Notes: generated by a model from the letters alone, not told the origin. 64,000 bases of DNA from Chlorokybus atmophyticus (GCA_009103225.1 RHPI01000890.1:80544-144543); one strand, 5' to 3'; counted from the first letter of the stretch, positions 21,976 through 43,169 are shown. Program-made: numbers and translations.

Positions 21976-22511
<536 letters not shown>

Positions 22512-22703
22512 NCATGATGAGAGGTGCTTGTTAATGCCATTAGCGATATGACGGACGAGCCTTGTCCTAAGGGCTACCTCTAGGCAGTCTAGTGGTGACA
22601 CTCAAGGTAAGAACCTAGTATAGTGATTGCTTATGCAATACGTACTACTAGCAGCATAGTATGCTGGCTGCATGCAGCCACATGACATGACCCGTTGTTT
22701 ACA

Positions 22704-30782: not shown

Positions 30783-33150
<2,368 letters not shown>

Positions 33151-34352
33151 GTGGCGACCCCGGCCGAGAGTTTCTCTTTTTTCCGATAAGGTTTGGCCGA
33201 TAGTTTCCGAACACGATCAGCAACGACTATTTGTTTCTCAGATCCGTCGATCCAGGTCTCAGGTCTCTCTGAAATTAGTGTGCGTTTTGGCCTGGCCTGG
33301 CCTGGTCTGGCCTGGCCTGGCCCAGGCTGAGAAGGGCGTTGTGGGAGGCCAATGTGTAAATGTGATTTGTAATTAGATCATCAAAAACCAAGGACAGGGA
33401 GAGAAACGGAGCGGAGGTTGAGTGCTGGTGGTGGTCATGAGAGCAGATGGGATCTGGCGCCTCCAAGTAAATCATCACACATTGTTTGTTTGGAGTTTTA
33501 TGGAGTGTGTGTGGGTATGGGCGTCTGTGTGTGTCTGTGCGTGTGCGTATAGTAATATTTCTATGTATATCTGTCACACACGAGTGGCACCTACAGTTCT
33601 TAAACAACTTGAGTGTCTCATACACCTACCAGTAGTAGTTTTACTTACAAGAGTCCTTGTCAATCAGCCTGAGACAGGGTCTGAGACAGGGTTCTCAGAT
33701 AGTCTAATAGTTTGTCATGTTGAATTTATAAAGTGTTGACGTGGAGTGATGAGGTTGCGTGACGCACTAGATGCAACATGCTGAGAACTGCGTGTGTGTG
33801 CGGATTGAAGCAGTCATAAGTTGGTGAGACTAGTTTTTCCCCCAATCTACCTTGGCAGGCAAAACTCATGCGTTCAGTCGTCACTGCTTCACTGCAACGC
33901 TACTTCACGCCATGCACGCCACACTTACATGTTCGCACGCACGCGCGCATGCACACGTATACACGCACACCTTCGCCCGCCTCTACCCATCAACACCACG
34001 CACCCACCCGCTCCCCCCCNNNNNNNNNNNNNNNNNNNNNNNNNNNNNNNNNNNNNNNNNNNNNNNNNNNNNNNNNNNNNNNNNNNNNNNNNNNNNNNNN
34101 NNNNNNNNNNNNNNNNNNNNNNNNNNNNNNNNNNNNNNNNNNNNNNNNNNNNNNNNNNNNNNNNNNNNNNNNNNNNNNNNNNNNNNNNNNNNNNNNNNNN
34201 NNNNNNNNNNNNNNNNNNNNNNNNCACACCACCACCACCCCACCCGCACGCACGCACGCACGCACACAGAGCAAGCACACTGGCAAACCCACCCCAGCTC
34301 CCACTGTCGCACATGTGTCCATGTGCCTCTCTCTCTCTCTCTCGCTCCTCAG

Positions 34353-35428
34353 ATCCTCTGCCGTTCATCCCCCTCCCCCTCCTGACGACCCCCTCCTCTC
34401 CCCCGCCCTCGTCCCCACCGACCTCTTCTTCGACGACAGCAGCGTCGGCACGCCCGTGCGACGGCGACACCGCAACAACAGCGCAGAGGAGGAAGCCGGA
34501 GCTAGTGGTAGCGGTGCGGAAGCGGAAGCGGAAGCGGAAGCGAGGAGGAGGGAGGAGGAGACGGCCGCGGCGGTGCAGGCGAACAAGGGAGGGAAGGAGG
34601 TGAGGAGAGCGGGAGTGGGTGGGTGGGTGCGTGCGTGCGCGTGTGTGTGCGAGTTCTTATGTCAAGTTTGTCTCAGAGCACACGCCCGTGTGCGTGTCTG
34701 CATCCGTGTGCATGCAGGGACGACGCATGCGCCAGTGGGGGTACACGCGTGTATATCGGTGGTTGTGTGTCCACAACACCCATGGCAGACGCTGATCACA
34801 CATGCCATGGTTTTCTCATCTTCGTTTTTCTTTGTGTATTAGGGTGCCAGTGGCGGTGGGTCGATATTGCAGAAGCTGGGATTGAGGAAAAGGTCGGCCG
34901 ACGCGGAGGTCACCGAGTACATCGCGCGCAAGAAACAACTCAAGACCGTCCCCGCAGAGGTGTGCAACAGACACACATGCATGATGATCAGATGCTGGTT
35001 ATCATCCTTTGACAAACGCGACCACCAACACCACAACAATATCAATGACAACAGGTGTGGCACTATGGGAACATTGAGACGCTGGATCTATCGTGGAACA
35101 ACCTGCAGGTGTGCCAAGCGGACACGTGTCTGTTTGCCTGTAATTATGCGTGCTTGTGACTCACTTAAGTACGCGTGTGTACCGTATATGTGGCAGGCTG
35201 TGCCTGCGGGTCTTTTCCCGCGCGTTGCCAAGAACCTCCGCACGCTCAACCTCTCGTACAACGAGCTCGTCAAACTACCACGCGACCTGGCCTCACTCAC
35301 ATCCCTATGCACACTGGACGTCCAGGTGAGTAGTCACTTCCACACAAGTGCATACACGCACTCGCACACACGTGCATGCACACCCACCACCCACAGTCAC
35401 ACGCGTGCACGCGTACTCACGCATGTGC

Positions 35429-35460
<32 letters not shown>

Positions 35461-38400
35461 GCACATACCCACCGTCACACGTGCACACACGCATATACAC
35501 ATACATGCATACACACGCATAAATGCACGTGTACGCGCGCGCGCGCGCACGCAATCACATTCCGCACGCGCACACACAGACACACGAGCATGCGGACGCA
35601 GAACACACAACGATACGAACTACTGTTGAGACCTCAATAACAACAACAACAACAACAACACCCTCCCCTCCCCTCCAGGCCAACTCCCTCTACTTCCTCC
35701 CCGACTCCCTCCCCTCCCTCTCCTCCCTCCTCTCCCTCCGCGCCGCCCACAACCGCCTGACGTCCGTCCCCCACGAGCTCCGCAACTTCGCCCTCCTCAA
35801 GACGCTCGACCTCAGCCACAACAACATCAACAGGTTGGGACGGACCGTCGGGACGCTGGAGGGGGTGGAGGAGATACGGATGGGGGGGAATAAGGTGCCG
35901 GCGATGCCGAGGGATATAGGGAAGTTGAGGAAGGTGAGGGTGGGGTGGGGTGGGGTGGGTGGGTGGGAGGGGGTGGTGTTGGTTGGGTACTGATGTGGTG
36001 TGTGTGTGCGTGTGGTAGTTGCGAGTGCTTGAGCTGGCTAATAATCGGCTGACGGCCCTGCCCTCGGACATCGGCCTCTGCACTGCCTTGGAGTGAGTGC
36101 AGTGAACAACATGTCATGGAGCACACACCAACCACACACACTCACCCACCCACTTACCCACCCACCCCCACCCACCGCAGGCACTTGGACCTCTCCCACA
36201 ACAGCCTCGGCGCCATCCCCAAGGAGCTCTCCCACTGCCTCCACCTCCGCCTCCTCCTCCTGTCCGGCAACAAGCTCAAGCTCCTCCCCCCTGACTTGGG
36301 CTACCTCACTTCTCTCCAAGTCCTCGACGCCTCGCACAACGCGCTCGTGGCACTCGTGATGACAGTCACAGCGGGGAAAGGGGGTAAACACACACATGCA
36401 CATCATCAGCAGTGGAGGGAGCTGAGGAGACTGGATGTGGGGTACAATAACCTGGAGATGCTGCCGGCGGCCATAGGGAGGCTGCCGAAGTTGGAGGAAT
36501 TGAATGTGGAGGGTAACACGCAACTGAGGGTGCCGCCGCAGGTTGGGGGGAGTGTACGTGTGCGTGCGTGCGTGTGTGTGAACTAGCTGATGACGTTGTT
36601 ACCTTCGTCTGCCAGGTGACTGTGAGGGGGACTGCCGCCATCATGTGTTACCTCAACACGGTCGGTGAGCAGATGCGGGCTGTGGATGACTACCTCGAGA
36701 GGTTCACGTACTCCAACGTGGAGCAGAACGAGGCCCTACTCGACAGCGTCACCACACAGCAGAAGCAGGAGGTAGGTGTTGATGCCTCCTTTTCTTTCTT
36801 CCGGCGAATATGTGTCTCGACCCAAACATCCGTGTAATTGCTGATGTCGTGTCTATGTGTGTGCATGTATCTCGCAGACGCAGGCCCTCGCACAGCTGTC
36901 CATGGAGTTGGCTGTCTCACGCACGAGCACACCATCAGTGATATCGGTATGCGCATGATGATCCCAATCCGATAGTAGTAACCCAATATCAACGACAACA
37001 ATATGTTGCGTGTTAGCCCGAGAGGCGCGAGGAGCTCGCCCGCAGCGTGGCCGCCACCCGCAAGCGCCTCGAGGACGACCCGCGCCTCGCCCGCATAGCC
37101 CTCCCAACCCTCGCAGACAAGTAAGCCTCTCATCTGAGGGCTTTACACCCCACCCCAACACCAATAACACTCCCACCCCAACAGGCAGCGCGAGTTCCGC
37201 GACGAGCTCCACCAGACCCGTCGCCTCCTCGCCGGCAGCGGCGGTGGTGGTGGCGGCGGCGGTAGTGGGAGTGGTGGTGGGGCGCTGGGGAGCGTGGCGG
37301 TCAGGCAGGCGGAACGGGCGAGAAGGACGGGGATGATGAATATGAGGGGGTGCGACCTGCAGGCCGTGCCGCCGGAGGTAGGGGGTTGTAGGCCACACTC
37401 GAGTGGGCATTGGTGTGCGTGCGTGCGTGCGTGCGCAAGCTCTGTTTCTAATCACCACAACTGTATTCGTGCATGCGCGCATGCACGCACGCATGCATAT
37501 ATACACACGTGCGTGCATGTGATATCAACATTCGCTTTACATAGGTTGCCACTATGGAGGATGTGCGTGTTGCGGACCTGCGGGACAACAGGCTGGAGCA
37601 CCTGGGGGAGCCGCTGCTGCACATGCAGGCGCTTCAGGTGAGTGCGGTGTCATCAACAACAGCAACGACGACCATGACAACGACACCGACAACAACAGCA
37701 ACAGCAGCAATGACCATCAGGTATTGGCGGCCGGTCACAATCGGCTTGCGGGGTTGAACGAGGCGTCGATCGACCTCCCGGTGCTGCGCCTGCTGGGCCT
37801 GTCGTACAACTTCCTGAGGGAGATGCCTCCTTTGCTCGCTCGCTGCTCACAACTACAAGTAAGCGATCGTACACGTATGATGAGACACAACGAGCAGGAA
37901 CATGTGTGTGTGTGTGTGTGTGCGCGCGTTTGCATGTGCGTTTGCGTGTGCCTATGCGTGCGCGTGCGTGCACGCGTGTGTGTGTGCGTGCGTGCATGCG
38001 TGCGTGCGTGCGTGCGTGCGTGTGTGCGTGTGCGTGTGCGTGTGCGTGTGCGTGTGCGTGTGCGTGTGCGTGTGCGTGTGCGTGTGCGTGTGCGTGTGCG
38101 TGTGCGTGTGCGTGTGCGTGTGCGTGTGCGTGTGCGTGTGCGTGTGCGTGTGCGTGTGCATGCGTGCGTGTGTGCGTGTTTGTGCGCGTGCGTGCATGTG
38201 TGTGTGTGCATGCGTGCACGTGTGTGCGCTCATGCCTGAGTGCGTGATGGCGCGCACACACGCACTTGGCATGCTTGTTCGTGTTGATATATGTATTCGC
38301 ACACGTGCGCGTATGTATGCGCATGTGTGAGTGTGTATGTGCGAGGGTGGGTTTGCACGTGTGCATCAACGGGCATGTGTGCGTGTGGATGTATGTCAAC

Positions 38401-39119
38401 CTCAATCAACTCCTTATATTAGTGTGCATGTGTTTGTGTATGCGCCTCCGTACGTGTGCGTGCGCGCCCTTGGTGTGGGTGTGGGTGTGGGCGTTTGGGC
38501 GTGTGGGCGCGCGCATATGCAAGATAACCACTCTTTCCCCGCAGTTGCTGTGCGTGGCCAACAACATGCTTACCGACCTCCCCCCCTCCTACTCCCGTCT
38601 CTCCTCCCTCTCGGAGCTCTACCTCTCCGACAACAGCTTCTCCTCGATCCCACTCTGCATCTACACCCCCACCCCAAACATGTCCCCCACCCTATCCACC
38701 TCCCTCACTCGTCTCTCCCTCGCCTGCAACGCCATCCGCCTCATCCCGCCCGAGCTGTGTTCATCCCTGATCAAACTCAAGTCACTCGACCTCAGCTTCA
38801 ATCAGATACTGAGAGTGCCCAAGGAGCTCGAGAGACTGGTGGAGCTGGAGGAGCTGAATCTGAGCTTCAACCCGTTGGCGGAGTTTCCGGGGGCGGTGAC
38901 GAGGTTGGGGAAGGTGAAGGAACTGAACCTGAACTATACGGGGGTGAGTGGGTGGGGGTGCGGGTGTGCGTGAGTGTGCGTGTTGCGTGCGTGCGTGCGT
39001 GCGCGTGAATATGTGTGCGCGCCCGTGTGTGTGAGCATGTGTGTCCTCGCGATACGACAGCTGACTCAACAGCACTAACCAGTCCACGCACTGCACCAAA
39101 CTACTCACTACTACTCACT

Positions 39120-39163
<44 letters not shown>

Positions 39164-39227
39164 NNNNNNNNNNNNNNNNNNNNNNNNNNNNNNNNNNNNN
39201 NNNNNNNNNNNNNNNNNNNNNNNNNNN

Positions 39228-39276
<49 letters not shown>

Positions 39277-42200
39277 AGCTCTCTGTGATCCCCCCTTCCA
39301 TCGGTCTCTTCCCCTCCCTCTCTTTCCTCCACCTCACCGGCAACCCCCTCTCCTACCCTTCCTCCCACCTCTACTCCCCCTCCCACCCTCTCCTCATCTA
39401 CCACTTCTACCACCCCCACACCACCACACTCAACCTCTCCAACTGCGGCCTAACAGAGCTCCCTGAAACAATCGGGGAGTTGAAAGAGTTGGAGGAGTTG
39501 GATCTGAGTGGGAATGAGTTGGAGGGTTTGCCAGTGGCTTTGGGGGAGTTGAGAGGGAGGCTGAGGAGGTTGATGTTGGAAGGGAATGAGAGGTTGGAGT
39601 GGCCGTGGGATAGAGTGAGGAGACTGCCGGAGGGAGATATGGCGGTGGTAAGTTGTGTGTTGTGGGTGTGTGGGTGTGCGTGTGGTTGAGCGGAGTTTTG
39701 GTGTGTGCGTGCTTCTAGGCTGAATGGTCAGTTTTGCTGGTGCAGGTGGCATTTTTGGATCCGTTGGTGGGAGAGTTGGATCTGTCGGGGATTGATTTGG
39801 GGCGCGTACCGCCCCAACTGCTGAGACACGAGGGCAACTTGCTGCGACTCAACCTCGCCCGCAACGGACTCGCCGTAAGAGCATATGCATGCCCGCACGT
39901 GTGTGCACATGTGCACCAAGGTGTCTCCGCACTCGCGTGTCCGTCTGCACGCGCACGTGCATGTGGCCTGCGAGAGCGCGCGTGTGTGGCATGCTCAGCA
40001 CACGTGCACGTGCATGTTGGTATGCGCGCACGTGCCCATGTGCTGAGCATACCCGCGTGTGAGTGTATGCATCAACCACACCTCCCCCACCCCCCAGTCC
40101 CTCCCCCCCTCCTTCGACCGCCTCTCCTCCCTGACCATCCTCGTCCTCGACGACAACCCCTTCTCCCCTCCCGCCCTCCCCTCCCCCGTCCTCCGCCTCC
40201 CCCGCCTGCAGGTCCTCGAGGCCTCGCGGTGCGGACTGGAAGAGGTGGCGGGGGAGATCGGGGAGATGAGGGAACTGAGACAACTGGTACTGGCATCCAA
40301 CCAGCTCACAGCACTGCCAGAAGCTGTCTCAAGACTCACAAAGCTACAGACACTCGCCATACCCGACAACAAGTAAGTTGGTGTGTGGGTGTGTGGGTGT
40401 GTGCACTCTCGCGCGCTAGCGCGAGCGCGCGTGCATGTGTCTGTGTGTTGTGGGTTGGTGTGTGATGTGGGTGGTGTTGTTGTCTAGGTTGAGGGAGTTG
40501 CCGGAGGGTTTGTGTGAGTTGAAGGGTTTGGAGGTGCTCGACGTGCGATCGAATGATCTGGCGGCTTTGCCGCGGGACCTGGGCGGGTGCTGCGCCCTGA
40601 GATGGCTGGACGCACGCATCAACGACTTGCAGGAGGTGAGTTGCACGCATGCATGCGCAGCTGTGCACGCTTGCATGAACATGCGCACACGCGTACACGC
40701 ACACTCACATGGTGACGGAGTTCATGTCTGACTTGAACGGTTCTCACAGTTGCCTGAGAGCCTCGGTGACCTCTACTCCCTGGAGCACTTGTGCGTGTCG
40801 AACAACGCACTCTCTTCCCTCCCGCGCTCCATCCGCAAGCTCGGGGCCCTCGCCTCCCTGGACCTCGCCGCCAACCACCTCCGCACCATCCCAGTAGAAG
40901 TGAGTACGCTCGCACATACGTGTTTAACTATAACACATCTCTCTGGCCCGCTCTGCAGTTGTGTCTGCTCCCCGGGTTAAGGGAGCTCTCCCTCTTCGGC
41001 AATGCGGCGCTGCCGTCGGGTGACAGCGGGGTGGCCAAGGGCGGGGACCCGGGAGCCGTCCGCGCGCTACTGAAACGCGTGGCCACGGAGCTGCAGAGGA
41101 GGGGAGAGTGGACGGCGGCCATGTCGTCCGTGGCGTTCAGGTGGGTGGGTGGGTGGGTAGGGGTGGGGGTGGGGGTGGGGGTCTTTGTGCACACGTTTGT
41201 GCGCGGGTGTTTGCGTGCATGTGACTGCGTGCGTGTGTGGGTGTCTGTACGTGTGTGCACGTGCGTATGTGTGTTGGCGTTGGGGTCTCTGAGTGTGCGT
41301 GTGCCTGTGTAAGCATGTCGGTGTGTGCTTGCAGCCCCTGCAGACCATAGCAATGCATGTGAGCTTTCACACGTTGGACACACAGTCCTCTGTGTACAGG
41401 CCGCCGCCCAAGCCGTTGGCAAGAAAGACCATCACATTCAAGCTGCCGGCTGAACAAGCGGAAACAGCAGACGATGCACAAGGCCAATACAAACAACCTG
41501 AGCAACAACCAGGAGTGGAACAACTAACCACAGTTGCCGAGAGAGCGAAGCGCCCTTTGCTCATGGCACGCAAGGTGAGGACCCATCCACACCACTTAGC
41601 TCGCATTCAACTGGTTGCATTATCAGAACTTGTATGTGTGTGCCTCTTACAGGTCAGTTGGGGCAAAGACAGCTTCCATTGGGGTGCCACATCAGGAATG
41701 GACCAAGAAAAAGAGGGATCACCCTCTGTCAATGACGAGCGTGTTGAATGTGCCAAAAGTGGCTCTGTTACGCCACCTGCGCAGGCAGACTTGCCAAAAA
41801 CTCATGACACGCAAGATGCCGACGAGGACAGGCACGATGAGGATGAGGGTATTCATAATGCGCAGGAGGAGGAGATTGAGCATCAGGACACAGAGGAGAG
41901 GTGAGAGTGTTGCAGTGGCTTACTACTCACATTGTCTACACTTTGTGTTGTCTGTGTGATCTAGGCATCATTATGATAACTGATGTTGTTTTCGCTGCGC
42001 GCAGTGCACAAGCGGAGAGCGCACACAGCACCCGTACGAGTACTGAGGCGGATGAGAAGGGCGAGGAGGAGGAGGAACAGGACGACAAGTTGGAGACAGT
42101 GGAGAAGATGGAGAAGGTGGAGAAGGTGGACAGTAAGGAGGCAGAGGAGGAGGAGGAGGGTGAAGAGGAGGGGGTCTTGAAAATCCCACCTGCACCTACT

Positions 42201-43169
42201 AGCTCACGCCTGCCAGAACTTTCAACGGCAACAACAGAAGAAACAGTGTTGGAAGTCCCACTTGCACCCAGTATTTCACTGCCAGAGCCGTCATCAGTAA
42301 CAACTGAAGAACCGATAGCGTCAACCTCTACTCAGTCGTCCCCTCAAGCAGAATCCCACACCCGTCACACGCACTCACCGACGGGAGTGTCCGAGAGCTC
42401 ACCTTCAATGCAACACCAAGGCCAAACGGTAGCTGCGCCAGCAGCGGCACTCATGCCCGCAACTGCATCATCAATACCAGCAGCGCCCATACCGGCAATG
42501 CGCATGGTGCCATTGCAGGTGCCAGTTCCTGGCAGACCAGCCATGGCCATGCCAGTTCGATTGCCAATGCCGGCACTGTCACAGGCACCGGCACCGGTGT
42601 CACACACTGCGGGAAGGCTGCAGATGCCAGTGCCGGTACCAATGACCATCCCTGGAGCCTTCCCGAGGCCAGCAGGACTGCCCATGCCAGTTTCATCTGG
42701 ACAACTGGTCAGGCCAGCTGTCATTGCACCCAGGCCAGCACAGATGCCGGCACCCGTACCCGTAGTATCCGTACCAGTTTTCCGGCCAGTGCTGCTACCC
42801 GGGCAAGGTTCGCAGCCAAGACCAGTTACCCTGCTACCTGGTGCTGCTCCCAGGCCAGTTCAGCTTCTTCCTCCTGGTATGGTACCGGCACAGCACCCAC
42901 CTCGGCCTCCCCTCATGCCAGGAGTACATGTCATGCCTTCACCGGGAATGCCAGCTGCACTGCCAGCGCGACCTCCATTAGCCATGCCAGGGATGCCAAG
43001 AATGCCAATACCAGGAATGATGGTTAGACCACTGCAGCCAGCAGTGATGATGCCAGGTGCTCCCGTTCAGGTGAGGCCCATGCCAGTGCCGGGAGCTAGC
43101 GGGATGGTGAAGCAACAGCATGGGGGTATGCTGTCAGTGCCAGTAGCCGAGAAGCAAACTAACAGGTAG
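34353..43169 (+). CDS. Large multi-exon leucine-rich repeat protein (about 30-35 LRRs by eye) with acidic and Pro/Met-rich C-terminal tail; true start unresolved (upstream gap)
   Basis: About 20 in-phase exons with LxxLxLxxNxLxxLP units ([56 protein letters not shown]), internal cap motifs such as [22 protein letters not shown], and a terminal exon ending EKQTNR* at 43169. Confidence 0.85.
38022..38160. repeat. (GTGTGC)n hexamer array inside an LRR-gene intron
   Basis: Tandem gtgtgc units within a ~680-bp GT/GC-rich intron. Confidence 0.9.

What the first reader, a model, noticed from the sequence alone, without database searches (positions are those of the whole stretch)
33900..41320. C-rich/G-rich oscillation through the LRR gene that flips mid-exon and dictates codon choice
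The sense strand alternates strongly between C(T/A)-rich and G(A/T)-rich blocks of a few hundred bp. C-to-G switches fall inside exons (~35830, ~37230, ~38815, ~39465, ~40215). G-to-C switches tend to fall in introns or short exons. Equivalent LRR residues use CTC/TCC/CCC codons in the first half of an exon and TTG/GAG/GGG codons in the second, and flanking introns continue the skew as (GGGT/GT)n versus (CCCA/CA)n. The neighbouring MATE, peptidase and CCDC97 genes lack this pattern. It suggests a pre-mRNA architecture in which complementary blocks pair to bring splice sites together (as described for AC/GT intron repeats in fish), or a locus-specific G4/R-loop/chromatin code strong enough to override codon bias. 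Best candidate for an undescribed system in this window.
Basis: partly seen in the sequence, partly recalled or inferred. Interest (0 to 1): 0.75.

Follow-up and report, generated by a model that had tools for sequence, protein, structure and literature searches.

The report
Exon-centred C-to-G strand-skew wave
Within one leucine-rich-repeat gene the coding strand flips abruptly from cytosine-rich to guanine-rich in the middle of every long exon, strongly enough to rewrite codon and amino-acid choice. The pattern is real and unusual, its cause is unsettled, and the proposed intron-bridging RNA pairing does not fit.

Summary
A 20-exon LRR gene on the + strand (exons 34353-41140, all GT-AG, phases chain) carries eight abrupt C-to-G skew jumps. 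All eight lie in exons, and each of the six exons longer than 240 nt has exactly one near its centre (circular-shift p about 0.004). Third-position skew goes from -0.92 to +1.00 in one exon. Leu is CTC 73/92 in C-blocks and 1/51 in G-blocks. The rest of the 64 kb and 80 unrelated LRR loci lack the pattern.

Both assembly gaps lie outside coding sequence. One is inside a (CT)n intron array; the other is upstream of exon A.

- The polarity is opposite to the zebrafish class.
- Adjacent blocks match only in composition.
- Predicted pairing runs across exons, not introns.
- G4 motifs are not enriched beyond composition.

Two-fold C/T codons follow the wave (T from 0-4% to 79%), but G/A codons do not. 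Introns are mirror-symmetric (GT-rich versus CA-rich), and the locus is CpG-island-like.

My best reading, at low confidence, is a transcription-linked, R-loop-like strand-asymmetric mutation process acting with G/C-ending codon preference.

This scan has flagged the same pattern on at least eight other pieces of this genome. One was followed up, and its cause was also left open.

The parts
34353..41140 (+). LRR gene, exons A-T. A 34353-34599, B 34843-34959, C 35055-35108, D 35197-35325, E 35679-35933, F 36019-36092, G 36181-36541, H 36616-36771, I 36878-36946, J 37017-37120, K 37185-37377, L 37545-37637, M 37721-37858, N 38545-38943, O 39279-39647, P 39746-39874, Q 40098-40372, R 40488-40635, S 40750-40899, T 40959-41140. 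The 5' and 3' ends are not resolved.
   Evidence: All exons are flanked by AG/GT and their phases chain without a stop. Pfam LRR_8/LRR_4 hits in E, G, N, O and Q span the flips.
34353..34599 (+). Exon A with a C>G jump at 34479 (relative position 0.51)
   Evidence: Third-position skew -0.82 then +0.64
35679..35933 (+). Exon E with a C>G jump at 35831 (0.60)
   Evidence: Third-position skew -0.80 then +0.86; jump score 1.43
36181..36541 (+). Exon G with a C>G jump at 36346 (0.46)
   Evidence: Third-position skew -0.62 then +0.70
37185..37377 (+). Exon K with a C>G jump at 37233 (0.25)
38545..38943 (+). Exon N with a C>G jump at 38803 (0.65)
   Evidence: Third-position skew -0.65 then +0.65
39279..39647 (+). 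Exon O with a C>G jump at 39473 (0.53); the strongest case
   Evidence: Third-position skew -0.92 then +1.00; jump score 1.65; no AG in the first 177 nt
40098..40372 (+). Exon Q with a C>G jump at 40217 (0.44)
   Evidence: Third-position skew -0.85 then +0.21
40959..41140 (+). Exon T with a weak C>G turn at 40966-40973, at its 5' edge
35934..36018 (+). Intron E/F, G/T-rich throughout, with (GGGGT)n-like repeats
   Evidence: Skew +1.00/+0.83; TRF
36093..36180 (+). Intron F/G, with (CCCA)n-like repeats in its 3' half. Together with intron E/F it flanks the 74-nt exon F.
   Evidence: Skew -0.09/-0.87; inverted match I14, 81% over 31 nt
35326..35678 (+). Intron D/E, C/A-rich throughout.
37859..38544 (+). 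Intron M/N, G/T-rich, with a (GTGTGC)51 array at 37904-38209. The G>C turn is at 38507, just before the acceptor.
38944..39278 (+). Intron N/O, which turns G>C at 39043. Its (CT)n array holds the assembly gap 39164-39227.
34020..34224 (.). Assembly gap in C-rich low complexity upstream of exon A
33056..33255 (+). Tentative first exon (ATG 33056; phase-compatible donors at 33151 and 33256), with a weaker C>G turn near its 3' end
   Evidence: an inference, with no transcript evidence

Best explanation
The locus is a chain of about eight strand-skew dyads. Each dyad is a C-rich block of roughly 150-400 bp followed, without a spacer, by a G-rich block of similar size. The dyads are separated by variable neutral stretches. 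They lie in a CpG-island-like gene (GC 0.60, within-block CpG o/e about 1).

I think the wave is made mainly at the DNA level, by a strand-asymmetric loss of cytosine (and, in introns, of adenine) from whichever strand is locally G-rich. That is the result expected if the G-rich strand is the one left single-stranded, for example as the displaced strand of R-loops. Skew favours R-loops and R-loops deepen skew, so the process would reinforce itself and produce sharp two-state blocks.

A strong preference for G/C-ending codons (about 0.85-0.87 G+C at four-fold sites in the strongest blocks, against 0.54-0.62 in introns of the same blocks) then turns a cytosine bias into near-total C-ending or G-ending usage.

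The exon phasing is real. On this view it is secondary: introns are missing around dyad centres, so those exons are long.

Shown: the anatomy, the phasing, the codon response, the mirror composition of the introns and the CpG richness. Inferred: single-strand exposure, R-loops, antisense transcription, the feedback, and the reason introns avoid dyad centres.
For: The wave ignores exon and intron identity. Whole introns take the state of their flanks, and 13 of 14 short exons show no internal C>G polarity. It is therefore a domain structure, not a per-exon signal.

Intron composition is keto versus amino and mirror-symmetric: G 48, T 32, C 14, A 6 against C 44, A 26, T 19, G 10. k-mer use is mirrored, with composition-corrected r = 0.72 in introns.

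Two-fold Y-ending codons go from 0-4% T in C-blocks to 79% T in strong G-blocks (p = 3e-13). Four-fold sites swap C for G while A and T stay near 10%. That fits cytosine loss combined with G/C-ending preference.

Within-block CpG o/e is 0.96-0.99 and GC is 0.60, against 0.74-0.77 and 0.51 in the flanks.

The exon blocks are not simple repeats. LRR coding itself does not cause the pattern: 80 control loci lack it.

No sequence-specific complementarity exists that would point to selected RNA helices.
Against: C-blocks would require the antisense strand to be the exposed one, hence antisense transcription, for which I have no evidence.

Two-fold R-ending codons do not respond (r = 0.03), so the exonic pattern is not the mirror image a symmetric process predicts.

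The switch of Arg from CGN to AGR needs a transversion, which looks more like general avoidance of C than deamination.

The implied difference in C/T equilibrium between blocks, my rough arithmetic from the fractions, is of the order of 100-fold. That is very large for a nuclear gene.

A mutational cause does not by itself explain why 8 of 8 jumps are exonic.

G runs are fewer than composition predicts.
Confidence: 0.33

Rival explanations
1. Selection at the RNA level for compositional complementarity. Each C-block pairs with the G-block that follows it, folding long exons into exon-centred hairpins that bring the exon's own 3' and 5' splice sites together, or that mask cryptic sites. This would be a structural aid to defining exons longer than about 240 nt.
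For: Every exon over 240 nt has one central flip. Predicted folds pair C-blocks mostly with the following G-block (250 vs 100 and 341 vs 72). Block-to-block duplex energies are large, -63 to -156 kcal/mol for 150 x 150 nt. The wave seems confined to one gene. The codon response follows sense-strand C only.
Against: There is no complementarity beyond composition. Only 3 of 6 long exons fold better than whole-exon shuffles. Burying splice sites in helices usually hinders splicing (general knowledge). The same helices would persist in the mRNA. The 1.27-kb open frame downstream (41901-43169) shows no such wave.
Confidence: 0.2
2. A splicing-signal composition code. C-rich sequence around 3' splice sites and G-rich sequence around 5' splice sites, bound by C- and G-specific RNA-binding proteins, spreads from intron ends into exons.
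For: The last 50 nt of the intron have negative skew in 12 of 19 introns, and 9 of 19 start G-rich. Long exons begin C-rich and end G-rich.
Against: Ten of 19 introns start C-rich or neutral, and 6 end G-rich. EF, OP and QR are G/T-rich right up to the acceptor. Thirteen of 14 short exons lack the polarity and exon P is reversed. The skew is strongest within about 150 nt either side of the mid-exon flips, not at the splice sites. C and G runs are under-represented. The mirrored k-mer use is not expected for two unrelated protein-binding motifs.
Confidence: 0.1
3. A footprint of stable meiotic recombination hotspots: GC-biased gene conversion plus strand-asymmetric damage or repair around recurrent breaks.
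For: GC is raised (0.60 vs 0.51) and CpG is not depleted. The dyads are symmetric. From memory, not checked here: mouse hotspots were reported to carry a nucleotide skew that changes polarity at their centres (Smagulova et al. 2011).
Against: Deamination of the 3' overhangs predicts G-rich on the left and C-rich on the right of a break, the reverse of the sharp jumps (my derivation). If breaks lay at the G>C turns, the skew should peak there, but it peaks next to the C>G jumps. Introns in the same blocks are much less GC-rich than four-fold sites, which argues against regional gene conversion. GC content does not track the flip score significantly.
Confidence: 0.1
4. Neutral domain formation by simple-sequence dynamics. 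Slippage-prone skewed microsatellites of one orientation expand and seed more of their kind, and coding sequence drifts along.
For: Introns are full of (GT)n, (GGGT)n, (GCGT)n and their complements. Two volvocine green algae (Chlamydomonas reinhardtii, Volvox carteri) have their highest tandem-repeat densities in introns and coding sequence (PMC3887541).
Against: Exon blocks are no more repetitive than composition predicts; most z values lie within about 1.8 of zero, with two exceptions (A_G, O_G). The shift is site-by-site codon choice across whole blocks. Random orientation would not place 8 of 8 jumps in exons.
Confidence: 0.1
5. A translation-speed code. C-ending (fast) then G/T-ending (slow) codons pace co-translational folding of the LRR solenoid.
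For: Only codon choices that involve C respond.
Against: Introns carry the same skew. First and second codon positions and amino-acid composition shift as well.
Confidence: 0.03

Closest known systems
Zebrafish (AC)m-(GT)n structured introns (Lin et al. 2016, PMC4691745)
   Same: Complementary simple repeats lie near splice sites, and pre-mRNA pairing is the proposed role.
   Different: In fish, AC follows the 5' splice site, GT precedes the 3' splice site, and the two co-occur across introns but not exons. Here the polarity is reversed and complementary blocks face each other across exon centres. No intron has the fish layout. Coding sequence takes part in the wave.
GC-skewed, R-loop-forming unmethylated CpG-island promoters of vertebrates (Ginno et al. 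2012, 2013; from memory)
   Same: GC-rich DNA that is not depleted in CpG. The skew turns from C-rich to G-rich at a point, and the G-rich strand runs 5' to 3' away from that point on both strands.
   Different: Those are single promoter elements at transcription starts and, as I recall, with much weaker skew. Here there are eight dyads 0.5-1.6 kb apart inside one gene, centred in coding exons, with third-position skew up to 0.9-1.0.
Replication-origin skew jumps (bacterial oriC; mammalian N-domains; from memory)
   Same: An abrupt upward jump with the same polarity, and a G+T versus C+A signature.
   Different: The scale is about 1 kb here against 100 kb to Mb, and the wave is confined to one gene.
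Codon bias near exon ends attributed to splicing enhancers (for example Willie and Majewski 2004; Parmley and Hurst 2007; from memory)
   Same: Synonymous choice depends on position within the exon.
   Different: Those are effects of a few percent within tens of nt of splice sites. Here usage is nearly all-or-none, changes at the exon centre, and is shared by the introns.

Membership tests
Fish-type (AC)m-(GT)n intron-bridging introns | Complementary repeats at opposite ends of the same intron | tested here: not met
   Only introns NO, AB and KL turn from G-rich to C-rich, and none has AC at the 5' end with GT at the 3' end. Most introns are uniform.
Fish-type (AC)m-(GT)n intron-bridging introns | AC downstream of the 5' splice site and GT upstream of the 3' splice site; co-occurrence across introns, not exons | tested here: not met
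   GTGT 50 vs ACAC 17 after 5' splice sites. C-type then G-type blocks face each other across exons.
Fish-type (AC)m-(GT)n intron-bridging introns | A bridging helix more stable than expected | tested here: not met
   Duplexes across G>C turns have z from -2.2 to +3.1, mean about +0.5. Predicted folds favour pairing across exons.
Fish-type (AC)m-(GT)n intron-bridging introns | Splicing independent of U2AF2 | not testable with these tools
   Needs experiments.
R-loop-forming GC-skew CpG islands | High GC with undepleted CpG | tested here: met
   GC 0.60; within-block CpG o/e 0.96-0.99 against 0.74-0.77 in the flanks.
R-loop-forming GC-skew CpG islands | Skew turns positive downstream of a transcription start | not testable with these tools
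   The polarity matches, but there are no transcript-start data.
R-loop-forming GC-skew CpG islands | R-loops detected; DNA unmethylated | not testable with these tools
   Needs DRIP and bisulfite data.
G-quadruplex motif clusters | G-run and G4 motifs more frequent than composition gives | tested here: not met
   G runs of 3 or more: 115 against 175 +/- 9. G4 motifs: 6 against 11.6 +/- 2.5 in tile shuffles.
True palindrome / inverted duplication | The left arm aligns to the reverse complement of the right arm | tested here: not met
   z below 1.3 for all seven exons.
Leucine-rich repeat proteins (Pfam LRR_8, LRR_4) | Profile match above the curated cut-off | tested here: met
   LRR_8 at 34.7-64.5 bits (cut-off 27) in exons E, G, N, O and Q.

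The most novel reading that the evidence does not exclude
The skew dyads are a selected, functional nucleic-acid code carried by a subset of genes in this alga. Cytosine density on the transcript, or guanine density on the template, would be set block by block across exons and introns. The purpose might be to fold long exons, or to place R-loops, nucleosomes or unmethylated islands inside genes. The code would be strong enough to dictate codon and amino-acid choice in conserved proteins.
Probability: 0.25. Interest if true: 0.9.

Novelty: new variant of a known kind. Interest (0 to 1): 0.72.

Why it matters
Codon and even amino-acid choice in this gene is set by position along a roughly 0.5-1.5 kb nucleotide wave, not by the usual gene-wide codon bias.

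If the cause is mutational, this is an unusually strong, fine-grained strand asymmetry in a nuclear genome. It would serve as a natural read-out of which strand is exposed at each point along a gene.

If the cause is selection, it is a new layer of information in coding sequence, bearing on splicing, chromatin or RNA folding.

Either way it matters for gene finding, codon-usage models, transgene design and substitution models in this lineage. The pattern recurs in a subset of genes, so it can be tested genome-wide.

Tried and rejected
Tested and rejected as explanations:
- True palindromes: no alignment beyond composition.
- Recent tandem duplication of a C|G module: best inter-exon score 54, no long identity.
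- Selected RNA helices.
- A G4 code.
- Cryptic simplicity in exons.
- A link between GC peaks and flips, or a weak version of the wave in the rest of the window: rho about 0.02-0.05.
- LRR coding as the cause.

Tried without useful result:
Those places were sent to no search tool afterwards.
- Orthologues: the representative search returned only generic LRR proteins at 31-44% identity. The word search found nothing above 48%. The metagenome scan with non-LRR exon H found nothing, and with exon N only distant LRR loci. An exact look-up of an ORF product found nothing. The wave's conservation and the direction of substitutions could therefore not be tested.
- Neighbour genes: two Pfam scans of candidate exons gave no hits, so their names are unverified.
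- Literature: searches found no description of an exon-centred skew wave. The Smagulova 2011 paper could not be fetched.
Full report
**Observation**

A sliding GC-skew profile shows strong alternation between about 33.8 and 41.4 kb. In 200-bp bins, mean |skew| is 0.27-0.30 at 32-44 kb and 0.07-0.13 in every other 4-kb stretch of the window. With a left/right jump score (150 nt each side), the only jumps of 0.7 or more from C-rich to G-rich in the whole 64 kb are seven inside this gene and one at the edge of a 530-bp (CT)n array. Eighty LRR-coding loci fetched from metagenomes show nothing similar. In the GC-matched subset the largest jump is 0.51, against 1.60 here. LRR coding as such is therefore not the cause.

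**Gene model and gaps**

Reading the three + frames gave 20 exons (A-T, 34353-41140), all with AG/GT borders and phases that chain without a stop. Pfam places LRR_8/LRR_4 in exons E, G, N, O and Q, with domain alignments that run across the flips. Both halves of these exons are therefore coding in one frame.

The gap at 39164-39227 lies inside a (CT)n array of intron N/O; the same repeat is on both sides. Exons N and O are both phase 0 and continue one LRR. The gap at 34020-34224 lies upstream of the exon A acceptor in C-rich low complexity. Exon A starts in phase 1, so at least one upstream exon exists. A candidate with ATG 33056 and phase-compatible donors is tentative. The 3' end beyond exon T is also unresolved: my hand check of the two nearest candidate acceptors (41335 and 41344), read, found neither in frame.

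**Anatomy of the wave**

- C>G jumps lie at 34479, 35831, 36346, 37233, 38803, 39473, 40217 and about 40966. All eight are in exons.
- Each of the six exons longer than 240 nt has exactly one jump, at relative position 0.44-0.65, and no opposite turn. Under circular shifts of the wave against the exon map, p is about 0.004 for that pattern and 0.025 for 8/8 in exons.
- The jumps are abrupt: mean skew goes from -0.40 to +0.39 within one 30-nt step, and the blocks hold about 0.5-0.7 for roughly 150-180 nt on each side.
- The G>C turns lie in introns (four) or short exons (three), and are often spread over neutral stretches.
- Whole introns take the state of their flanks. EF, OP and QR are G/T-rich up to the acceptor; DE, FG and JK are C/A-rich from the donor or over most of their length.
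- Thirteen of 14 short exons have no internal C>G polarity, and exon P is reversed.

The unit is therefore a C|G dyad of a few hundred bp whose centre lies in coding sequence. It is not a signal carried by every exon.

**Effect on coding**

Skew is strongest at third positions. Exon O goes from -0.92 to +1.00, and exon E from -0.80 to +0.86. First and second positions also shift.

When each codon is classed by the skew of its 90-nt surroundings, with the codon itself excluded:
- Leu is CTC 73/92 in C-blocks and 1/51 in G-blocks (TTG 27, CTG 21).
- Arg changes from CGC to AGG.
- Ser changes from TCC to AGT/TCG.
- Asp changes from GAC 22/22 to GAT 9/11.
- C-blocks encode L, S, P, T and H. G-blocks encode G, E, R, A and V.

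Two-fold Y-ending codons go from 0-4% T to 79% T along the skew axis (r = 0.49, p = 3e-13). Two-fold R-ending codons do not respond (r = 0.03). Four-fold sites swap C (0.80) for G (0.78) while A and T stay near 0.1. In exons the variable is therefore cytosine on the sense strand, and the pattern is not mirror-symmetric.

In introns it is mirror-symmetric: G 48, T 32, C 14, A 6 against C 44, A 26, T 19, G 10. k-mer use is mirrored too. G+C is about 0.85-0.87 at four-fold sites in the strongest blocks but 0.54-0.62 in introns of the same blocks. A separate preference for G/C-ending codons is therefore at work.

**Test of the RNA-pairing reading**

The zebrafish class has AC repeats after the 5' splice site and GT repeats before the 3' splice site, co-occurring across introns and not exons (PMC4691745). 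Here GT-type repeats dominate after 5' splice sites (50 vs 17). No intron has the AC-then-GT layout, and no intron spans a C>G jump.

Adjacent blocks are complementary only in composition:
- Left halves do not align to the reverse complement of right halves (z below 1.3).
- Duplex energies equal those of within-block shuffles.
- Only three of six long exons fold better than whole-exon shuffles.

In minimum-energy folds of 1.8-2.1 kb of pre-mRNA, inter-block pairs are mostly between a C-block and the following G-block, that is, across the exon centre (250 vs 100 and 341 vs 72). If pairing matters, it folds exons rather than bridging introns.

**Other readings tested**

- G runs of 3 or more and canonical G4 motifs are fewer than local composition predicts (115 vs 175; 6 vs 11.6).
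- Exon blocks are not cryptically simple, apart from the 3' halves of exons A and O.
- There is no sign of recent duplication of a C|G module.
- GC content does not track the flip score significantly.
- Within blocks, CpG o/e is 0.96-0.99, against 0.74-0.77 in the flanks, and GC is 0.60 against 0.51. The gene is CpG-island-like.

**Explanation**

The domain behaviour, the keto/amino mirror composition of the introns, the C-to-T shift at two-fold sites and the CpG-island character fit a DNA-level, strand-asymmetric loss of C (and A) from the locally G-rich strand. That is what is expected for the displaced strand of R-loops, with skew and R-loop formation reinforcing each other. G/C-ending codon preference would then convert the bias into near-exclusive C- or G-ending usage.

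This needs antisense transcription over the C-blocks, for which I have no evidence. It does not by itself explain why every jump is exonic. It is also strained by the unresponsive R-ending codons and by the size of the effect. I give it about one chance in three.

The rivals are RNA-level selection for exon-centred hairpins (0.2), a splice-signal composition code (0.1), a recombination-hotspot footprint (0.1), neutral simple-sequence dynamics (0.1) and a translation-speed code (0.03). The rest of the probability lies with causes I have not thought of.

**Limits**

No orthologue or close paralogue could be found. Conservation, substitution direction, expression and splicing therefore remain untested.

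**Earlier notes**

The scan's notebook lists at least eight other pieces of the same genome with the same kind of wave. They include a conserved WDR35 gene and one followed-up case in which two genes and a dead copy carried it while ordinary neighbours did not; its cause was left open. I did not see those sequences. They suggest a property of a subset of genes in this genome rather than of LRR genes. I did not verify that the organism is a green-lineage alga, as that note says.

**Verdict**

The favoured interpretation is not supported and the cause is open. I found no description of such a wave in the searchable literature.

Noticed in passing
window 21983-22511: A pure (CT)n microsatellite of about 530 bp with a single N at 22512. 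It gives the only strong skew jumps outside the LRR gene.
   Followed up: partly
window 37904-38209: A (GTGTGC)n array of about 51 copies, alternating purine and pyrimidine, inside intron M/N.
   Followed up: no
window 41901-43169 (+): A 422-codon open frame, acidic (E/K-rich) then P/A/M-rich low complexity, with no Pfam hit. It carries one G>C jump at 42183 that follows the amino-acid composition. It is unclear whether it belongs to the LRR gene.
   Followed up: partly
window 34960-35054, 35326-35678, 37638-37720: Several introns end in A/C-rich tracts, such as (CAA)n and CAACAG-type sequence, instead of a classical U-rich polypyrimidine tract. Others (EF, OP, QR) end G/T-rich.
   Followed up: partly
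window 35831 and 40217: At two mid-exon flips the sequence reads CAG|GT, like a proto-splice site. All seven flips have a CAG or YAG within a few nt. This might mark lost introns, but it could not be tested without orthologues.
   Followed up: partly
They lie in the C/A-rich intron D/E and were left out of all later searches.
   Followed up: no
window 37394-37515 and 39988-40053: Local hairpins inside introns K/L (41-nt arms, 71% complementary) and P/Q (26-nt arms, 88%). These are the only introns with an internal inverted repeat.
   Followed up: no
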